IMG/VR virus record: IMGVR_UViG_3300009093_000034 | Location: 124,001-188,000 of that record | Length of the DNA: 64,000 bases | Strand: one strand, 5' to 3' | Shown: piece by piece, positions 6,091 through 32,881 of the stretch | Numbering within the stretch: the first letter of the stretch is position 1 | Layout: each line of letters opens with the position of its first letter | The notes under the pieces: model-generated | Told to the model about the DNA's origin: nothing | Seen by the model: the letters and a program-made list of their open reading frames with translations, nothing else | Database searches by the model: none | Program-made: the position numbers and the translations under genes

Positions 6091-6255
6091 AAAGAAAGCG
6101 TCGGTGGTTAGACTTACTTCGGATTATCAACCGCGTGGTGTGGGTTCGATTCCCATAGCTCTCCCTAAAACATCTTTGAGATAGGGTTTTTTAGGGAGAG
6201 CTTAGCTTAATGGATAGAGCACGTAACTTAGTTTGACCGATTATTACCTTTCTTT
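6091..6255 (+). ncRNA. Circularly permuted tRNA-mimic RNA 2 (YrlA/Y-RNA-like)
   Basis: T arm 6140-6156, then 14-bp acceptor 6157-6170/6189-6202 closed by a hairpin, then D arm 6203-6220; 5' and 3' ends pair in place of the anticodon arm. Confidence 0.75.
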
Positions 6256-7805: not shown

Positions 7806-8273
7806 ATGGAACAACTATCAGAATCCTTAGGCGTCGGCTTCTACAGAGTAGGTCGAATCACCATCCCAGTAAGAATGGCATCACATGCCACAGATCGCCT
7901 GGAACAAAGGTTTCCTGGTGTTGAGATCTCCCAAGTTAAAGAGATATTGAATAAGGGTGTTCAGCAGATCGCCCAACCAAGTGGTCACGTTGAACTTGGG
8001 CAATATTTGATCATCGATCAAAATGATGGTGTGATGTTGCCTATCAAGATTCAGAAGAATGATCGACCTGGGTATGAGAGACAAACCATGGGATTCATCC
8101 CAACGGTTATGGATTGGAAACTTCAATCAGACTCTGATTACCCTGAAGATCTCTTAGACAAGTACCACTTCTTGAAGAAGATCTACGTAGAAAGTGCTTC
8201 ACGATGGGAGGTTCCCAATCTGTCGAAGACAGGAACCTTTAATGGAGAACCTTGTACCATCATCTACGTCTAA
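7806..8273 (+). CDS. Hypothetical protein
   Basis: 155-aa ORF in operon. Confidence 0.6.
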   Translation: MEQLSESLGVGFYRVGRITIPVRMASHATDRLEQRFPGVEISQVKEILNKGVQQIAQPSGHVELGQYLIIDQNDGVMLPIKIQKNDRPGYERQTMGFIPTVMDWKLQSDSDYPEDLLDKYHFLKKIYVESASRWEVPNLSKTGTFNGEPCTIIYV

Positions 8274-8284
8274 AGGAATTTGAC

Positions 8285-9196
8285 ATGAGTGACACCTTAA
8301 CACTAGAGATCCTAGTCGGTGCCCCTGCTTCTGGTAAGTCCACTTACGCAGAAGAAAAACTAAAGACTGAGAAGAACTGGGTGAGGATCAACAAAGATAC
8401 CTTGAGAACCCAACTTCGTCAGGCCAAGAAAGATTTTACCGAGCGTGAGCTCAACAGTATTGAAGACATTCACATTGAGGCTGCGCTCAAAGCGGGATCA
8501 AGCGTGATCGTTGACGACACCAACTTGAATCCTTTCCATGTCAAAGATCGTCTACGACCTTTGGGACGGAAGTACGGAGCCAGAGTTCTTGTTAACACTG
8601 AGTTTCTTAAGGTTCCTGTGGAAGAACTGATTTCTCGAGACAAGAGACGAAAGAACTCTGTTGGTGCAGATGTCATCAACGACATGGTCGACAGGTTCTA
8701 TGCTACTTGGCTTAGGAACGCCACTCCTTGGTTGGATACAATCAAGGAAAACAAAGAGAAGACTCCTGTTTATCTCTTTGACTTGGACGGTACCTTGGCC
8801 TTCGCTACAGAGCGAGGTTGGTACGAGGACAAGTTGGCAGGAACGGACACTCCTAACATTCCTGTCATGGGAATCTTGAAGAGTCTTCTTCGCTCTGTGA
8901 GAGTCATCTTTGTTTCTGGTCGAGAAGATAAGTCTTGGCAAGTCACGTGGGATTGGCTCATTAAGCACAGTGAAGTAGGTTTTGACACGTGGGATTCTGG
9001 TCAACCTATGCTCTTGATGAGAAAGACGGGTGACGAGCGTTCTGATGACGTAGTCAAGGCTGAGATCTATAACGAGCAGATCAAGGACAACTTCAATGTT
9101 CTTGGGATCTTCGATGATCGACCTAAGGTCGTTCGAATGTGGAAGTCTCTTGGCTTGTTTGTGTTCGATTGTTACCAATCTGACCAAGAGTTCTAA
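8285..9196 (+). CDS. pseT: Polynucleotide 5'-kinase/3'-phosphatase (T4 PseT-like)
   Basis: P-loop GAPASGKST, RINKDTLR, HAD motif FDLDGT, FDDRPKVV. Confidence 0.93.
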   Translation: MSDTLTLEILVGAPASGKSTYAEEKLKTEKNWVRINKDTLRTQLRQAKKDFTERELNSIEDIHIEAALKAGSSVIVDDTNLNPFHVKDRLRPLGRKYGARVLVNTEFLKVPVEELISRDKRRKNSVGADVINDMVDRFYATWLRNATPWLDTIKENKEKTPVYLFDLDGTLAFATERGWYEDKLAGTDTPNIPVMGILKSLLRSVRVIFVSGREDKSWQVTWDWLIKHSEVGFDTWDSGQPMLLMRKTGDERSDDVVKAEIYNEQIKDNFNVLGIFDDRPKVVRMWKSLGLFVFDCYQSDQEF

Positions 9197-12903: not shown

Positions 12904-13923
12904 ATGGATATCAAGATCATCGGTTGTGGCGGAGCTTTCTCCGAAGACGGTTATTTATTTCACCAGTCTTTTTTGATCAGTGAAGGTGGAGAGAACCTTC
13001 TATTTGATATGGGCAAGGACGTTTGGCCTTGGGCTATGAAGAAGCAAGGCTTGGGTGTTAATGACATCCATCAGGTCTTGATCACTCACCGTCATGACGA
13101 TCACATCGGTTCATTGGGAACTTTTGGTCTCAAGAGATACAATTGGTTTGAGAAACCTATTCACTGGAAAGACTCAAAGAGAGATTACGCTCCTACCCTG
13201 ATTTACTCCATGGACCTTCAAGATGGTCTTTGGGAGTCTCTTAGAGGTAACCTTGAAACCAATGAAGGTTTCGTAGGTTCTTTGGAAACGTTCTTCAAGT
13301 TGAAGCCTATCAAGGAAAACGAGCACTGGGATTTCCACGGTTGGGATCTTCAATTGGTTCGCCAAGTCCATGTCATGGCCGGAAACTCTTTGATGAGTAC
13401 TCATGGTTTGTTCCTGGAGAAGGGTGATCACAGAATCTTCCTGACCGGTGACTGTCAGTTCTTCCAGCCCAAACAGGTTATCTGGTTCTACAACCGAGCT
13501 ACCTTCATCATCACAGACAACGAAACTGTAGGATCCAACTTCCTTTTCCAAGAAGGAACTGAAGTCTACGACGTAACCATCGATGGAAAGAAGGTTACCA
13601 AGCTTTGGCCTACTCTTCTTGAAGACCCTGATGGAATGAAGGTCATGGAACTAATGGCCCAGGATTTCACTCCCTACAAGTGGGAAGTCTTGAAATTCTC
13701 TTCAGGTGTTCACTCGACCTATCCTGAATTGGCAGGTTATCCTTCCGCCAATGCTACAAGGCTTGCTCCTGAGATCAAGAAAAAGATGCACCTTTCTCAC
13801 TATGGTGACCACGTTCCTCAGAACAAGGATGCCTTTGGCAATGATCTTGACTGGGAAGCTCAAGCTAAGAAAGACGGCTTTGCTGGATTCGTCAAGCCTG
13901 GACAGGTCTTTCATTTCGAGTAA
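12904..13923 (+). CDS. MBL-fold metallohydrolase, Apyc1-like cyclic-nucleotide phosphodiesterase (alternative: RNase Z-like)
   Basis: IGCGGAFS, ITHRHDDHIG (HxHxDH), TGDCQF, SGVH, HYGD. Confidence 0.8.
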   Translation: MDIKIIGCGGAFSEDGYLFHQSFLISEGGENLLFDMGKDVWPWAMKKQGLGVNDIHQVLITHRHDDHIGSLGTFGLKRYNWFEKPIHWKDSKRDYAPTLIYSMDLQDGLWESLRGNLETNEGFVGSLETFFKLKPIKENEHWDFHGWDLQLVRQVHVMAGNSLMSTHGLFLEKGDHRIFLTGDCQFFQPKQVIWFYNRATFIITDNETVGSNFLFQEGTEVYDVTIDGKKVTKLWPTLLEDPDGMKVMELMAQDFTPYKWEVLKFSSGVHSTYPELAGYPSANATRLAPEIKKKMHLSHYGDHVPQNKDAFGNDLDWEAQAKKDGFAGFVKPGQVFHFE

Positions 13924-16202: not shown

Positions 16203-16325
16203 GTTCTCTTGAACAGCGGAACGGCACCTGCAGAAGGCTGGTACGATGTCGGATAGTACCTAAGTGTTGCTGGACTGGCACGCGGCTCGCAAGCCGAGGA
16301 AGAGGTTCGAGTCCTCTAGGGAACA
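16203..16325 (+). ncRNA. tRNA-shelled RNA with expanded D arm
   Basis: Acceptor GTTCTCT/AGGGAAC, perfect T arm, ~60-nt branched D region. Confidence 0.6.
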
Positions 16326-21375: not shown

Positions 21376-21486
21376 AAAGAGGAAGCAATTCCTGACTTCT
21401 ACGGAACGTCAGGTGGAAAACTCTTTGCTATACACCCAGCTAATAACTGGCACGCGGATGGTTCACTGAAGTTTCAGTCCGCACAT

Positions 21487-21558
21487 GCCTCTGTCGTCTA
21501 CAGGAAGGATCCCTGGTTTTCACCCAGGCGGACGTCGGTTCGAATCCGGCCAGAGGTA
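21487..21558 (+). tRNA. tRNA-Glu(TTC)
   Basis: CCTGG-TT-TTC-AC-CCAGG. Confidence 0.9.
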
Positions 21559-21631
21559 TAATTGGTCATTCGATCAAAACAAGGATCTTTTTGCTACCTT
21601 AGGACCGTTTGGTACGCAAAAGGAGAATTTT

Positions 21632-22273
21632 ATGATAGAGTATCCATCAATCATCAACAGCTCAAAAGCACCTCGTCAATCGATGATTGCGTTTGAGAAG
21701 TTGGACGGGAGTAACATCCGAGTCAAGTACACAGCTAAGAGAGGATTTGATCTCTTCGGAAGTCGAACTCAACTATTGGATGAAACTCATCCGATTCTTG
21801 GTGGTGTAGTCAAAGTCTTCAACGAGACCTGTAAGGAAGCGTTGGAAGAGTACTTCAGGAAGTACTACTCAAAGGAACGAGAGATCGAAGTCTTCGGAGA
21901 GTACGTCGGGCCTAACTCGTTTGCAGGCTTCCACTCGGATCCTGTTGACAAGATGAAGTTCGTGCTGTTTGACGTTATGATGATCCGTAAGGGTTATAAT
22001 GAGTTCTTGCTTCCGCAGGAGTTCATCAAGCTAGCGGAGCGTAACGCATCAGTTCCAGTCCCTAGAGTGATCTACGAAGGTAATCTTACCGACGATTTCA
22101 TCTCAAGAGTCCGTGCTGACGAGTTTGGAACATTCGAAGGTGTGGTCTGTAAGGGAAAGCAAGGACTCGGTTCTTTCCGAGGGAAAGTTTGGATGTGCAA
22201 GATCAAAACGAATGCATATCTAGAACTTCTCAAAGAAAAGAAAGGCGCAGACTGGGTTAAGTTTGCAGAGTAA
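21632..22273 (+). CDS. RNA ligase (Rnl2-like nucleotidyltransferase)
   Basis: Motif I EKLDGSNIR, FGE, FDV, EGVVCK, CKIK; RBS AAGGAG. Confidence 0.85.
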   Translation: MIEYPSIINSSKAPRQSMIAFEKLDGSNIRVKYTAKRGFDLFGSRTQLLDETHPILGGVVKVFNETCKEALEEYFRKYYSKEREIEVFGEYVGPNSFAGFHSDPVDKMKFVLFDVMMIRKGYNEFLLPQEFIKLAERNASVPVPRVIYEGNLTDDFISRVRADEFGTFEGVVCKGKQGLGSFRGKVWMCKIKTNAYLELLKEKKGADWVKFAE

Positions 22274-24898: not shown

Positions 24899-25228
24899 AT
24901 GAAATTGTTTGCTATCTTAGCTTTTGCTTTGGCATTGGTGTCGTGCTCTCCTGACAATGATCTGTCTCACGCCACGTATCCTGTTCGAGTTCTTTCAGTG
25001 TTCACTAACACCACAGAAGAAGTCGGATTCAACGGTACCAAGTTTACCAAAACAAACGGTTTTTCTACAGTGATCTATGTGGATGCCACTGGACGATCTT
25101 TCACTATCCAGGACTTTGGCATCCCTCAAGTGACCCCTGGTCAGCAGATCGAACTTCCTAAGGCCGAAAATCAACTTGGCCCAGAACTTCCTCCCCCTGC
25201 CAGTCCTGTTCCTACGAGTCAACCATGA
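24899..25228 (+). CDS. Lipoprotein
   Basis: MKLFAILAFALALVSC lipobox. Confidence 0.75.
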   Translation: MKLFAILAFALALVSCSPDNDLSHATYPVRVLSVFTNTTEEVGFNGTKFTKTNGFSTVIYVDATGRSFTIQDFGIPQVTPGQQIELPKAENQLGPELPPPASPVPTSQP

Positions 25229-25569
25229 CTCCAAGGAGAAACTGCGTAGCCGTCATCCAGGTGATGATGGACATGATCCCAAAAGATCAAACTGAGTTTC
25301 TCAAGGCTCTTCAATGGAACCTTGAAGACGCAGCTTACAAACCTCCTGAAGAGACTCTTCAATGGGAACGAACTGCGTACACTCTTAGCAAGTACATACC
25401 AATCCCTGAACAAGATTGGGAGCTTCAGGTGGTGAGCATCTTTACCACTGAACCTGTCGAAGCTATCAAAGCTAAGGTAGCCGAGTTCTTGAAACTCCAA
25501 CAACAAGGTTGGAAAGAACTCGAAGATGACATCGGAGACAAAATTTCTGATGCAAAGTTACTATTGTAA
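25225..25569 (+). CDS. Hypothetical protein
   Basis: ATGA-coupled. Confidence 0.65.
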   Translation: MTPRRNCVAVIQVMMDMIPKDQTEFLKALQWNLEDAAYKPPEETLQWERTAYTLSKYIPIPEQDWELQVVSIFTTEPVEAIKAKVAEFLKLQQQGWKELEDDIGDKISDAKLLL

Positions 25570-25578
25570 GGAAAGAAA

Positions 25579-25809
25579 ATGAAAGTTTTGGTAAGAAAAA
25601 TTGACGATGAAGAAAACTGGACATCGTCTCTAAGCATTGAGATCAATGGAGAAGAGAAGTTCAGCGTTCACGATGGTGAACCTGAAGACAATAGTCTCGG
25701 ACGAAACTTCTCCAGTTGTTATGGAATTCCTAGCCTTTTGAAAGCTGCTTATGAAGCAGGAAAGGCTGGAGAAGACTTTATCGTCGAAGAGACTAACGAA
25801 GAAGAGTAA
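25579..25809 (+). CDS. Hypothetical protein
   Basis: RBS AAGGA. Confidence 0.65.
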   Translation: MKVLVRKIDDEENWTSSLSIEINGEEKFSVHDGEPEDNSLGRNFSSCYGIPSLLKAAYEAGKAGEDFIVEETNEEE

Positions 25810-25815
25810 CTAAAT

Positions 25816-26032
25816 AAAGGTGTGGTGGAAGTCCGCTAGTAGATTGCTACTAGGCCCATGTGAATGGCCATTTGTATGGGATTGGGAAACAAAGACACAA
25901 GCTAGGTCGGGGCAAGACGGCCCATGTCAGAGGTTAAACTCTCTATCAACGGAGAGATCCTAGCTGCTACCTTGGTACGAGTATATCTTGGCGGGAAGTC
26001 ATAGCGTTCAGGTTCGAGACCTGACACCTTTT
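25816..26032 (+). ncRNA. tRNA-shelled RNA with tmRNA-like topology but non-Ala acceptor
   Basis: AAAGGTG/CACCTTT, T arm TCAGG-TTCGAGA-CCTGA, CCGC/GCGG helix enclosing ~155 structured nt. Confidence 0.6.
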
Positions 26033-26035
26033 TAC

Positions 26036-26107
26036 GGGCGGTTCGTTCAACGGATAGGACAGAAGTTTCCTAAACTTCCAATGTGGGTTCGATTCCCGCA
26101 CTGCTCA
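26036..26107 (+). tRNA. tRNA-Arg(CCT)
   Basis: GAAGT-TT-CCT-AA-ACTTC. Confidence 0.88.
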
Positions 26108-26176
26108 TTTCATTCAAAATTTTTCAAAACCTCCTTGATCGTGAGATATTGTATATGTCACAAAGGAGGCCATAAT

Positions 26177-28216: not shown

Positions 28217-28314
28217 AGGCGTCTTCTGGACTGATTGGAAACGGGTTCGATTCCCGTTGCGCCTAAAAACTTTCCCTCACTCGTACGAGATGAGGCGACC
28301 TCAATTTAAGGAGG
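28217..28314 (+). ncRNA. tRNA/Y-RNA-like element in the TROVE leader
   Basis: Perfect T arm 28241-28257; CGCCT can pair with 28218 or 28293 AGGCG; CCTC/GAGG hairpin covers the RBS. Confidence 0.45.
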
Positions 28315-28320
28315 TTGTCT

Positions 28321-29889
28321 ATGTCTAGAATGGCAAACAACCCCAAGGCTGCTACTGCAGCTAAGACCATGAGGAACATTCCTCAGGCAGATACTTTCAA
28401 CAAGGCAGGAGGACGAGCATATTCCAAGTCGGCTAAGGTCGAGCTTGCGGATCTCTTGTTCTCAAACTTCTTGTCCGGAGACACTTACCGAAAGGAAAGT
28501 GAAGTCTCCAAGAGGATCGAGGAGCTTGCTTCTCAGATCGAAGACAAGGAGTTCTTGGCCAAGGCCGCTCTTTACACTCGTAATGAGCTTGGCATGAGGA
28601 CCATGAGCCATCTGTTGGCAGGTGAGATCGCTTCCAAGAACTACGCTTCTGGCTCCGGCTGGGGACGTACCTTCTTCGATGCAATCGTCTACCGTGTCGA
28701 CGACATGGCTGAGATCCTTGGTTACTTCCTCGGAAAGGACCACAAAGCAATCCCTAACTCCCTAAAGTCTGGCTTCTCGTAAGCCTTCGATCGTTTCGAC
28801 GCCTACCAGTTGGCCAAGTATCGTGGTGACAGCAACGCTGTAAAGCTTGTTGACATTGTTCGACTTGTCCACCCGAAGGGAAACGAAAAGAACAAGACTG
28901 CTCTTGAGCAACTTGTTAAGGGAACCCTAAGAAACACCAAGACTTGGGAGGCTAAGGTCTCCGCAGCAGGTCAGAAGGCAACTTCCAAGGAAGCTGTCGC
29001 TGCTACCGCTGAGGCTTGGGAAGACCTTCTTAAGGAGAACAAGCTTGGTTACCTTGCTTTGATTCGTAACTTGACGAACATCGCCAACTCTGTTGATGAT
29101 GCTACGTTTGAGACGGCTCTGGCTCAGGTGATCGATGAGAAGTCTGTAAAGACCTCTCTAGTTCTTCCTTTCCAACTCTACATCGCTGCAAAGCAAGTAG
29201 AGAACGAGGGAAGGATCAAGAATCACAGCAGAATGTCAAAGGTGATCGACGCGCTGACCGCAGCCATCGACGTTTCTTTGTCCAACGTTCCTAAGCTCGA
29301 GGGCAAGACTCTCGTTGCAGTGGACATCTCTGGATCAATGGACTCTCGTCTATCAGCCATGGGTCAAGCTCGTGTTGTTGACGTAGCAACTCTCTTCGGT
29401 GTTGTCTTGGCTAAGGCTAACGATGCTGATTTGGTTCGCTTCAACACCAGTGCTTCCTACTCTGTTGTTCCTAAGTCTAGGTCTACTCTTGACTCTGTCA
29501 AGAGCTTGGCACAGACCGGTGGTGGTACTGCCTTCGAGTCCATCATGTACTTGATCAACCAGTCACAGACTGTCTACGATAGGATCTTGGTTCTATCTGA
29601 CATGCAGTCTTGGTCAGGAAAGACCGGAGGAGACTTCGCTCGCCTTGTCCAAGAGTACAGAAACAACAAGAAGCGTCCTAACATGACCTTCCTTTCGTGG
29701 GACCTCCACGGAGGAACCTCTCACCAGGTTCCTGAGTCTGATCCTCGTTCCATCGTCCTAGGAGGATGGAGTGACAAGATCTTCGACATCTTGGCAGAGA
29801 CCGAGACCGATCGAAACGCTCTAGTGAAGACCATCGAAGAGTACGAGATCAAGGTTCCTACCAAGGAACGAGCTCGTAAGACTGCGTAA
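28321..29889 (+). CDS. rsr: Ro60/TROVE-vWA RNA-binding protein interrupted by one in-frame TAA (28780-28782)
   Basis: NKAGGRAY, YTRNELGMRT, *AFDRFDAYQLAKYR continues in frame, LVHPK, TWE, ALIRNL, vWA VDISGSM and GGT..SDMQ. Confidence 0.88.
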
Positions 29890-31936: not shown

Positions 31937-32881
31937 ATGCGTAAAGACGTCCTCTTGTCTCGCGACGCCTTCCGCAAGGCTGTCTTTGATCGAGACCACA
32001 ACACATGCGTATTCTGTTCTCTTCCTGCAGTAGATGCTCACCACATCATGGAGCGAAAGCTCTGGCCTGATGGTGGCTACTATTTGAACAATGGTGCCTC
32101 CGTCTGCGAACAGCATCACTGGGATTGTGAGAACTCCATCATCTCTGTTGAACAAGTCAGAAAGGCTTGTAACATCATCGACATCATTCTTCCTCCTTAC
32201 TTTTCTGAGAATCAAATCTACGATAAGTGGGGAAATCAGAAGCTCACGACTGAAGAAGCCGGAGCTATCAAGTACCCTAGAACTTATCACTTCCCTTGGT
32301 CCCAAAATCTCATCAACGACGATCGAATGTTGGAGTCTACTTCTCAGTTCGAACTCAACCACGTGATCGCTACGGTCAAGATGGATGGTGAAAACACGAC
32401 CATGACTAGAGATGCTTGTCACGCAAGGTCTCTTGATAGTGGAGCTCATCCTTCTAGAACTTGGGTCAGATCTTTTTGGGGTTCTCTCAAACACAACATT
32501 CCAGAAGGTTGGAGAGTTTGTGGAGAAAATCTTTACGCAAAACACTCAATCCTTTATACTGATCTCACCAGCTATTTCCAAGGCTTATCAATCTGGAATG
32601 ACAAGAACATTTGTCTGTCCTGGAAAGAGACCAAAGAATGGTTTGAACTTCTTGGCATTCAACCTGTCCAAGAGATCTACGATGGCATGTACTACGAAAA
32701 AGGCATCAAGGATCTTTGGGACCCAACAAAAGGTTGGGAAGGCTACGTAGTTCGGTTCGCAGAGGAATTTCCTATGAGAGATTTCAATCTCAAGGTAGGA
32801 AAGTTTGTTAGAAAAGGCCATGTTCAAACTGATGAACATTGGATGCAACAAGCTCTGACACCTAATAAACTCCAGGCCTAA
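31937..32881 (+). CDS. HNH endonuclease-RNA ligase fusion
   Basis: N-term CVFC..DAHHI..LCxxHH; C-term KYPRTYHFPWS, VKMDGENTT, CGENLY, EGYVVR, KFVR. Confidence 0.85.
   Translation: MRKDVLLSRDAFRKAVFDRDHNTCVFCSLPAVDAHHIMERKLWPDGGYYLNNGASVCEQHHWDCENSIISVEQVRKACNIIDIILPPYFSENQIYDKWGNQKLTTEEAGAIKYPRTYHFPWSQNLINDDRMLESTSQFELNHVIATVKMDGENTTMTRDACHARSLDSGAHPSRTWVRSFWGSLKHNIPEGWRVCGENLYAKHSILYTDLTSYFQGLSIWNDKNICLSWKETKEWFELLGIQPVQEIYDGMYYEKGIKDLWDPTKGWEGYVVRFAEEFPMRDFNLKVGKFVRKGHVQTDEHWMQQALTPNKLQA

What the first reader, a model, noticed from the sequence alone, without database searches (positions are those of the whole stretch)
25816..26032. 217-nt tRNA-shelled RNA with tmRNA-like topology but a non-alanine acceptor
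Acceptor AAAGGTG/CACCTTT, an unpaired D-loop-like segment and a perfect T arm frame a CCGC/GCGG helix enclosing ~155 nt of hairpins and possible pseudoknots. There is no G3:U70 pair and no recognisable tag ORF. An ACTAAATA motif abuts the 5' end. This is the largest example of a recurrent shell-plus-cargo design.
Basis: seen in the sequence. Interest (0 to 1): 0.75.

Follow-up and report, generated by a model that had tools for sequence, protein, structure and literature searches.

The report
Phage tRNA-handled structured RNA, not tmRNA
A 306-kb soil phage encodes, inside its tRNA and RNA-repair gene island, a conserved 217-base structured RNA that carries a tRNA-like "handle" around a large cargo. 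It is not a tmRNA or a decoding tRNA; it most resembles the long-unexplained stable "species 1" RNA of phage T4.

Summary
The tRNA-like shell is real. It has a 7/7 Watson-Crick acceptor stem (25816-25822 with 25025-26031 corrected to 26025-26031), a canonical T arm (26008-26024) and a U discriminator. tRNA-Arg(CCU) starts 3 nt downstream. No tmRNA, tRNA, group I intron or YrlA model matches, and ARAGORN calls nothing. G000 and L008 differ in three hairpins by 12-13 double compensatory changes with no broken pair. About 90 nt of core and the shell are identical, and length is preserved, so this is a selected + strand RNA. A third lineage (L010/L051) lacks the whole unit exactly, so it behaves as a discrete gene. 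The surrounding genes encode Pnkp, two RNA ligases, a CCA-adding enzyme, an exoribonuclease and a Ro60 homologue 2.3 kb downstream. Best reading: a stable noncoding RNA cut out by the tRNA-processing machinery, with the invariant core as its working part. Ro60 binding (a Y-RNA-like role) is possible but untested. This is a new variant of a known kind (T4 rnaC-like). Interest is moderate.

The parts
25816..25822 (+). 5' strand of the 7-bp acceptor stem (AAAGGTG)
   Evidence: 7/7 Watson-Crick with 26025-26031. Identical in L008. The unit boundary matches the indel against L010/L051.
25823..25835 (+). Stem-less D-region analogue (U8, two GG doublets). Its last bases (25832-25834) may form a 3-bp helix with 25884-25886 that closes hairpins 1 and 2.
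   Evidence: Sequence conserved in L008 up to element position 16. RNAalifold pairs positions 17-19 with 69-71, with U-G changed to A-U in L008. This support is weak (3 bp).
25836..25853 (+). Hairpin 1 (7 bp, 4-nt loop)
   Evidence: 6 of 7 pairs changed on both sides in L008 and all remain Watson-Crick.
25855..25880 (+). Hairpin 2 (10-11 bp, conserved self-complementary GGCC tetraloop)
   Evidence: 4-5 pairs changed on both sides in L008 with none broken. The G-U pairs fit the + strand only.
25900..25965 (+). Invariant core domain: a 7-bp closing stem (AGCTAGG/CCTAGCT) holding two small hairpins and a 15-nt single-stranded stretch
   Evidence: 100% identical in G000 and L008/L009 although the flanking hairpins and the upstream ORF are strongly diverged. 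The structure comes from MFE and alifold only, with no covariation available.
25966..26005 (+). 3' domain: GCTA/TAGC outer helix holding hairpin 5 (25978-25990)
   Evidence: Hairpin 5 has 2 of 4 pairs changed on both sides in L008, with a different loop length. The 1-nt deletion at 25988 in soil runs X3 and X4 fits the L008-type loop.
26008..26024 (+). Canonical T arm (5-bp stem, TTCGAGA loop)
   Evidence: At most one substitution in the L008-type contig of run X4, which spans 25915-26131.
26025..26032 (+). 3' strand of the acceptor stem (CACCTTT) plus U discriminator; no encoded CCA
26036..26107 (+). tRNA-Arg(CCU), 3 nt downstream. Its RNase P cleavage would leave only a 3-nt trailer after the element's discriminator.
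   Evidence: ARAGORN and Rfam tRNA at 51.9 bits. Such short spacers are typical of tandem tRNAs in this genome.
28315..29889 (+). Context: Ro60 (TROVE + vWA) gene on the same strand, 2.3 kb downstream, with one in-frame TAA at 28780-28782
   Evidence: Pfam, translation. 43% identical to a 483-aa huge-phage homologue on both sides of the stop.

Best explanation
This is a gene for a stable noncoding RNA built as a natural 'tRNA scaffold'.

Architecture. A 7-bp acceptor stem, a stem-less D region and a canonical T arm hold about 185 nt of cargo where a tRNA has its D stem, anticodon arm and variable arm. The cargo has five hairpin domains.

Proposed biogenesis (inferred). The RNA is transcribed rightwards with the upstream small ORFs and with tRNA-Arg(CCU). 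RNase P cuts at position 25816. RNase P cleavage of the downstream tRNA leaves a 3-nt trailer, which is trimmed. The phage's own CCA-adding enzyme, or the host's, then adds CCA.

Proposed function (inferred). The tRNA-like elbow gives processing signals and nuclease resistance. The sequence-invariant core (25900-25965 and its flanks) is the working part and most likely binds a protein of the phage's RNA repair and quality-control set. The RNA is not aminoacylated and does not decode.

Shown here: the shell, structural selection on three hairpins, the invariant core, the discrete-gene behaviour, and the genomic context. Inferred: the processing steps, RNA stability and the partner.
For: Shell geometry.

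Position: the element lies in a 50-tRNA array, 3 nt before tRNA-Arg, with no promoter-like or strong terminator-like site between them.

Structural selection: 12-13 double compensatory changes and no broken pair across three hairpins between G000 and L008. Both are 192 nt long up to the T arm. G-U pairs are valid only on the + strand.

Sequence constraint: the core and shell are identical although the adjacent 76-aa ORF differs at many residues.

Real sequence: it is seen independently in other soil runs. X2 is identical, and X3 and X4 carry the L008-type element continuing into tRNA-Arg.

Discrete gene: the whole unit is precisely absent in L010/L051, where the same ORF is followed after 13 nt by the same tRNA-Arg.

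Not coding: reading frames are not conserved.

Processing and repair enzymes encoded nearby: CCA-adding enzyme at 39354-40742, metallo-beta-lactamase at 12904-13923, a 3'-5' exoribonuclease at 37951-38541, Pnkp at 8252-9196, two RNA ligases, and Ro60.

Precedent: T4 rnaC (species 1 RNA, 139 nt) has the same plan. It has a 3' T arm, an imperfect terminal stem and internal hairpins, and it sits beside tRNA-Arg.
Against: No expression data exist; no RNA run was listed. The ends, CCA addition and stability are therefore inferred. Only two sequence variants exist, so the core structure has no covariation test. The MFE z-score is only -0.98. An A1-U72 pair with three A-U pairs at the stem end is unusual for an RNase P substrate. 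The function of the cargo is unknown, and no partner was demonstrated.
Confidence: 0.6

Rival explanations
1. It is a Y RNA in function. The phage Ro60 binds the cargo (for example the bulged AGCTAGG-TC stem of the invariant core), and the tRNA-like module plays the role it has in bacterial YrlA/Yrn1. This is a special case of the best explanation, not an exclusive alternative.
For: Ro60 (TROVE + vWA) lies 2.3 kb downstream on the same strand. That meets the locational criterion of Chen et al. 2014 (PMC4201824: within 4 kb, same strand). Bacterial Y RNAs carry T arms and tRNA-like domains, and D. radiodurans Yrn1 has its terminal stem in the acceptor position. No canonical YrlA reaches the Rfam cut-off anywhere in the genome. 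The neighbourhood is an RNA-repair island, as at bacterial rsr-rtc loci.
Against: The YrlA model gives 12 bits here, and only across the junction with tRNA-Arg. There is no GNCGAAN0-1G or GGUCCGA motif inside the element. The nearest GTCGAAG lies in the upstream ORF and is not conserved in L008. Two other RNAs are better placed or better shaped. One is a mini tRNA-like RNA 50-60 nt upstream of the Ro60 start, about 28217-28266. The other is a YrlA-topology RNA at 6116-6246. The tRNA-like elements are so dense here that proximity is weak evidence. The closest phage Ro60 homologue (42% identity) has no T arm or tRNA within 20 kb.
Confidence: 0.17
2. It is a tmRNA-like trans-translation RNA charged with an amino acid other than alanine.
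For: The shell resembles a tmRNA tRNA-like domain: acceptor stem, D region without a stem, T arm. Short open frames ending in UAA or UAG exist in the invariant core.
Against: There is no ARAGORN tmRNA call. No Rfam tmRNA-family match appears even at E<=10. There is no G3:U70, and the acceptor carries no obvious identity set for the synthetases that work without an anticodon (established knowledge). The proposed P2 helix is not conserved. A 40-nt domain separates it from the T arm. The candidate frames lie inside a closed stem, and the AUG frame shifts in L008.
Confidence: 0.03
3. It is a decoding tRNA interrupted by an intron or insertion that is removed to give a normal tRNA.
For: The acceptor stem and T arm are perfect. 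Another element in this genome (55611-55720) does look like a tRNA with a hairpin inserted in its anticodon loop.
Against: There is no D stem and no anticodon stem-loop in either variant. Hairpin 1 has a 4-nt loop in G000, and in L008 a 5-nt loop (or 7 nt if drawn with a 5-bp stem, but then without U33). No group I intron match was found. The cargo of about 185 nt, taken as an intron, would leave about 32 nt of exon, which is too little for a tRNA.
Confidence: 0.03
4. It is a cis-acting processing or stability element. In this reading the tRNA-like structure merely punctuates the polycistronic transcript, defining the 3' end of the upstream mRNA as plant mitochondrial t-elements do, or it is a decaying tRNA relic without a trans function.
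For: It directly follows an ORF stop codon (6 nt) and precedes a tRNA. It is dispensable in the L010/L051 lineage. The genome holds several degenerate tRNA-like sequences.
Against: Punctuation needs only the shell. It does not explain about 90 nt of invariant cargo, three covarying hairpins and a preserved total length. A relic would not keep all pairs intact.
Confidence: 0.12

Closest known systems
Phage T4 species 1 RNA (rnaC, 139 nt) and species 2 RNA (rnaD), stable RNAs of unknown function in the T4 tRNA cluster
   Same: Both are encoded in a phage tRNA array next to tRNA-Arg. rnaC ends in a canonical T arm (CCGGG-UUCGAAU-CCCGG) followed by a 3' strand that pairs with the 5' end, and it carries internal hairpins instead of D and anticodon arms. 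That rnaC is processed by the tRNA machinery is my recollection of the 1970s-80s literature; it was not retrieved here.
   Different: There is no sequence similarity. The element here is 217 nt against 139 nt. Its acceptor stem is perfect (7/7), whereas rnaC's has two U-U mismatches. Its cargo has five domains.
Bacterial and phage Y RNAs (YrlA, Rfam RF02553; D. radiodurans Yrn1), partners of Ro60/Rsr
   Same: Both have a tRNA-like module with a canonical T arm and are encoded on the same strand within 4 kb of a Ro60 gene, in an RNA-repair context.
   Different: YrlA is permuted: its ends lie at the anticodon side, its acceptor stem is closed by a loop, and a D arm is present. Here the ends are at the acceptor stem and there is no D arm. 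There is no GNCGAA motif, and the YrlA model does not match.
tmRNA tRNA-like domain
   Same: Acceptor stem, D region without a stem, and T arm.
   Different: There is no G3:U70, no conserved P2, no pseudoknot or tag-frame architecture, and no model match.
Engineered 'tRNA scaffolds' for recombinant RNA, and natural tRNA-linked RNAs (mascRNA; herpesvirus MHV68 tRNA-miRNA RNAs). These are named from my own knowledge.
   Same: A tRNA-like fold is used as a processing and stability handle for an unrelated RNA payload.
   Different: These are engineered or eukaryotic systems. Scaffolds keep the D arm and replace only the anticodon arm.

Membership tests
tmRNA | G3:U70 alanine identity pair in the acceptor stem | tested here: not met
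   Pair 3:70 is A-U.
tmRNA | Match to tmRNA covariance models or an ARAGORN tmRNA call | tested here: not met
   No tmRNA-family match at E<=10 over 25700-26150. ARAGORN finds none in the window or genome.
tmRNA | Conserved P2 helix next to the T arm that closes the pseudoknot and mRNA-like domain | tested here: not met
   CCGC is CCCA in L008, and C21 belongs to covarying hairpin 1. 40 nt lie between GCGG and the T arm.
tmRNA | Conserved tag reading frame with a stop codon | tested here: inconclusive
   Frames in the invariant core are the same in both variants by identity. The AUG frame shifts in L008. No '...LAA-stop' is present.
Canonical tRNA | Cloverleaf with D arm and anticodon arm; match to the tRNA model | tested here: not met
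   No Rfam tRNA or ARAGORN call. No D stem and no conserved 7-nt anticodon loop with U33 in both variants.
tRNA with a group I intron | Group I core (P3-P9) and exons that join into a tRNA | tested here: not met
   No Intron_gpI match at E<=10. About 32 nt of shell cannot form a tRNA.
YrlA (RF02553) | Rfam score at or above 69 bits | tested here: not met
   12.3 bits, spanning the element's T arm and the D arm of tRNA-Arg.
YrlA (RF02553) | Permuted order: T arm, then closed acceptor-like stem-loop, then D arm, with the ends in a Ro-binding stem | tested here: not met
   The ends are in the acceptor stem and there is no D arm.
Y RNA (functional class) | GNCGAAN0-1G or GGUCCGA Ro60-binding motif | tested here: not met
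   None lies inside 25816-26032. The nearest GTCGAAG, at 25783, is coding and not conserved.
Y RNA (functional class) | Encoded within about 4 kb of Ro60 on the same strand | tested here: met
   Ro60 lies at 28315-29889 on the + strand. The criterion comes from PMC4201824.
Y RNA (functional class) | Physical binding to Ro60 | not testable with these tools
   Needs RIP or EMSA.
Phage tRNA-cluster stable RNAs (T4 rnaC-like) | Located in a phage tRNA array; 3' T arm abutting a terminal stem; non-tRNA interior | tested here: met
   for this element. for T4 rnaC.
Phage tRNA-cluster stable RNAs (T4 rnaC-like) | Accumulates as a discrete RNA processed by RNase P | not testable with these tools
   No RNA run was listed.

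The most novel reading that the evidence does not exclude
The element could be a new class of Ro60 partner: a Y-like RNA whose tRNA-like module keeps the native, unpermuted tRNA topology. It would be excised from a tRNA array by RNase P and CCA-tailed. Through its invariant core it would tether the phage Ro60 to other enzymes of a phage-encoded RNA repair and quality-control system (Pnkp, RNA ligases, exoribonuclease).
Probability: 0.15. Interest if true: 0.75.

Novelty: new variant of a known kind. Interest (0 to 1): 0.5.

Why it matters
Stable tRNA-like RNAs in phage tRNA clusters have been known since T4 species 1 RNA, and they still have no assigned function. This element is a larger and cleaner example. 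It has clear structural selection, an invariant core, a natural presence/absence polymorphism, and a telling neighbourhood (Ro60, Pnkp, RNA ligases, CCA-adding enzyme). That combination makes the old question testable by asking what the cargo binds. It also shows that the 'tRNA scaffold' trick used in biotechnology has a natural counterpart in large phages. Finally, standard tRNA and Rfam annotation misses a whole layer of tRNA-like genes in such genomes.

Tried and rejected
Searches for homologues that found nothing useful:
- megablast and blastn against GenBank phages gave only tRNA-level hits.
- Exact-pattern scans of IMG/VR with the T arm plus acceptor strand, two core pieces and the 5' shell found nothing or only chance 16-mers.
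- The metagenome scan found only the source contig.
- An 18-mer of the core in 596 Gb of GTDB genomes gave 26 hits. This is about the chance number, and none extends.

Protein-guided searches:
- The 273-aa neighbour gave no relatives.
- The 114-aa neighbour gave an unrelated AT-rich phage in IMG/VR, but it also gave the useful short contigs L008, L009 and L010 through the protein database.
- Homologues of the 76-aa ORF lie mostly in unrelated small phages. One of them, L016, has its own odd tRNA-like elements.

Ro60-guided searches: four IMG/VR loci and the closest GenBank huge phage carry no comparable element.

Other rejected ideas:
- No RNA-seq run was listed, so splicing and RNA ends could not be tested.
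- The ACTAAATA motif is not recurrent.
- A small protein is rejected because the frames are not conserved.
- A minus-strand RNA is rejected because the G-U pairs would become C-A mismatches.

Not attempted: I did not run an RNA-protein complex prediction, because the tool gives no verdict for RNA partners. I did not build a covariance model, because only two variants exist.

Full report
**Source**

The window is bases 124001-188000 of a 305,833-bp IMG/VR phage genome with direct terminal repeats, from a rhizosphere metagenome. ARAGORN finds 50 tRNAs in the genome and 20 in the window, all on the + strand.

**The observation**

- AAAGGTG (25816-25822) pairs 7/7 by Watson-Crick pairs with CACCTTT (26025-26031).
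- The T arm at 26008-26024 (TCAGG-TTCGAGA-CCTGA) is canonical and abuts the 3' acceptor strand.
- The discriminator is U, and tRNA-Arg(CCU) starts 3 nt later at 26036.
- Between the acceptor stem and the first hairpin lie 13 unpaired bases with two GG doublets and no D stem.

My genome-wide scan shows that a 7-bp partner with G-U allowed, at free spacing, is found by chance for many real tRNAs. The acceptor stem alone is therefore weak evidence. An all-Watson-Crick partner within 217 nt has a chance of about 0.01.

Orphan T arms are strongly enriched. There are 16 on the + strand against about 1.5 expected, and 12 of them lie in the tRNA region.

**What it is not**

No Rfam family matches the element, either at gathering thresholds or at E<=10. 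This covers tRNA, all tmRNA families, group I introns, Y RNA and YrlA. ARAGORN calls no tRNA or tmRNA there.

**Relatives**

DNA searches failed. Homologues of the neighbouring 114-aa ORF led to short soil contigs.

- L008 and L009 (JGI and ENA; the 114-aa neighbour is 96% identical) carry the element after the same 76-aa ORF. These contigs end inside the T loop.
- Logan contigs of two other soil runs (X3, X4) carry the L008-type element running on into tRNA-Arg. They show 1-nt deletions at 25988 and 26029 and at most one further change in the shell.
- Run X2 holds the G000 form exactly.
- In L010 and L051 (the 114-aa neighbour is 79% identical), the same ORF is followed after 13 nt directly by the same tRNA-Arg. 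The whole 217-nt unit is absent, shell and cargo together.

**Structure and selection**

G000 and L008 are both 192 nt long up to the T arm.

| Hairpin | Window coordinates | Pairs changed on both sides | Note |
|---|---|---|---|
| 1 | 25836-25853 | 6 of 7 | |
| 2 | 25855-25880 | 4-5 of 10-11 | GGCC loop conserved |
| 5 | 25978-25990 | 2 of 4 | |

No pair is broken in any of the three. The G-U pairs make sense only on the + strand.

The first 16 nt, about 90 nt of core (the stem AGCTAGG/CCTAGCT at 25900-25965 and its flanks) and the 3' part are identical. Meanwhile the adjacent 76-aa ORF differs at many residues.

L008 has CCCA there, and C21 opens hairpin 1. A 3-bp helix between element positions 17-19 and 69-71, with a U-G to A-U change, may instead close hairpins 1 and 2.

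Reading frames are not conserved between the variants.

Together these results show a selected, structured + strand RNA gene with a sequence-constrained core.

**Context**

The window is an RNA maturation, repair and quality-control island:

| Gene | Coordinates |
|---|---|
| Pnkp | 8252-9196 |
| Metallo-beta-lactamase | 12904-13923 |
| RNA ligase | 21485-22273 |
| RNA ligase | 31937-32881 |
| Ro60 (TROVE + vWA) | 28315-29889 |
| 3'-5' exoribonuclease | 37951-38541 |
| CCA-adding enzyme | 39354-40742 |

There is no promoter-like or strong terminator-like site between the upstream ORFs, the element and tRNA-Arg. A strong terminator follows Ro60.

**Mechanism**

I infer co-transcription with the neighbours, RNase P cleavage at 25816, trimming of the 3-nt trailer left by RNase P cleavage of tRNA-Arg, and CCA addition. 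The tRNA-like elbow would serve as a processing and stability handle, and the invariant core as the functional surface. None of these steps could be tested, because no RNA run is listed.

Aminoacylation is unlikely. There is no anticodon and no G3:U70, and the stem is A-U rich with U73.

**Ro60 and Y RNA**

Chen et al. 2014 (PMC4201824) found bacterial and phage Y RNAs within 4 kb of Ro60 on the same strand. They carry tRNA-like modules and a GNCGAAN0-1G motif. The element meets the location criterion and has a T arm. It lacks the motif, the D arm and the permuted topology, and it scores only 12 bits with the YrlA model.

Two other RNAs in the window compete for that role:

- a D-arm-less mini tRNA-like RNA 50-60 nt upstream of the Ro60 start;
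- an RNA at 6116-6246 with the exact YrlA order of T arm, closed 9-bp acceptor stem-loop and D arm (YrlA model 21.7 bits, E 0.016, below the 69-bit cut-off).

Phage Ro60 homologues elsewhere show no comparable element. I therefore rate Ro60 binding at about 0.15-0.2.

**Closest known**

T4 rnaC (species 1 RNA), fetched from AF158101, has a 3' T arm followed by a strand that pairs imperfectly with the 5' end. It has internal hairpins and a position next to tRNA-Arg. This is the same design, and its function is still unknown. The element shares no sequence with it or with any Rfam family.

**Verdict**

The tmRNA-like reading is not supported. The element is a new variant of the phage tRNA-like stable RNA kind. 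Interest is moderate.

Noticed in passing
window 6116-6246 (+): An RNA with the YrlA (bacterial Y RNA) topology: T arm GTGGG-TTCGATT-CCCAT, then a 9-bp acceptor-like stem closed by a 28-nt loop, then a canonical D arm, with the 5' and 3' ends pairing. The Rfam YrlA model aligns full-length but scores only 21.7 bits (cut-off 69; E 0.016). It lies 22 kb upstream of the Ro60 gene.
   Followed up: partly
window 28217-28266 (+): A mini tRNA-like RNA without a D arm: a 5-bp acceptor-like stem, one hairpin, and the T arm ACGGG-TTCGATT-CCCGT. It lies 50-60 nt upstream of the Ro60 start and is followed by a hairpin containing GGCGAC. It is a plausible Ro60-associated RNA.
   Followed up: partly
window 28780-28782: The Ro60 gene carries a single in-frame TAA. 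A 483-aa homologue from a 635-kb phage aligns at 43% identity on both sides, and the stop takes the place of one codon. This could be a sequencing error, a recent nonsense mutation or a recoding event; I could not tell which. The phage's suppressor-like tRNA has anticodon CUA, which reads UAG and not UAA.
   Followed up: partly
window 35775-35849 (+); genome 89383-89456 and 115277-115352: A tRNA with anticodon CUA (an amber suppressor type, which ARAGORN labels Pyl), and two tRNA calls with abnormal anticodon loops ('tc' and 'tt'). I did not analyse stop-codon usage.
   Followed up: no
window 16203-16324 (+); genome 55611-55720 (outside the window): Further 'shell plus cargo' elements. One is a 122-nt RNA with a 7-bp acceptor stem, UG at positions 8-9, no D stem and the T arm AGAGG-TTCGAGT-CCTCT. 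The other is a 110-nt tRNA-like RNA with a D arm and a hairpin of about 28 nt inserted in the anticodon loop; without the insert, the loop would read UAU.
   Followed up: partly
window 11263, 20763, 21044 (+); genome 111582-111661, 118305, 121472, 121512-121580: Orphan canonical T arms and probable atypical or degenerate tRNAs that ARAGORN and Rfam miss. The tRNA-like gene content of this phage is larger than the 50 genes called.
   Followed up: no
window 8252-9196, 12904-13923, 21485-22273, 31937-32881, 37951-38541, 39354-40742: A phage-encoded RNA repair and maturation toolkit interleaved with the tRNAs: Pnkp, a metallo-beta-lactamase (RNase Z-like or Apyc1-like), two RNA ligases, an Rv2179c-like 3'-5' exoribonuclease, and a CCA-adding enzyme with an HD domain.
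   Followed up: partly
L016:590-1012 (JGI Ga0485269_076595): An unrelated contig with a homologue of the 76-aa ORF. The ORF is followed by one normal tRNA and two tRNA-like elements of about 105-140 nt with T arms, imperfect acceptor stems and long inserts. Shell-plus-cargo RNAs therefore occur in other phages too.
   Followed up: no
upstream of many tRNA genes, e.g. genome 109574, 113997, 128028, 119939, 130259: A TTTATAC / TTTTATA-like motif ends directly at the 5' end of several tRNAs. It may be a promoter -10 box or a leader preference. It is not present at the 217-nt element.
   Followed up: no
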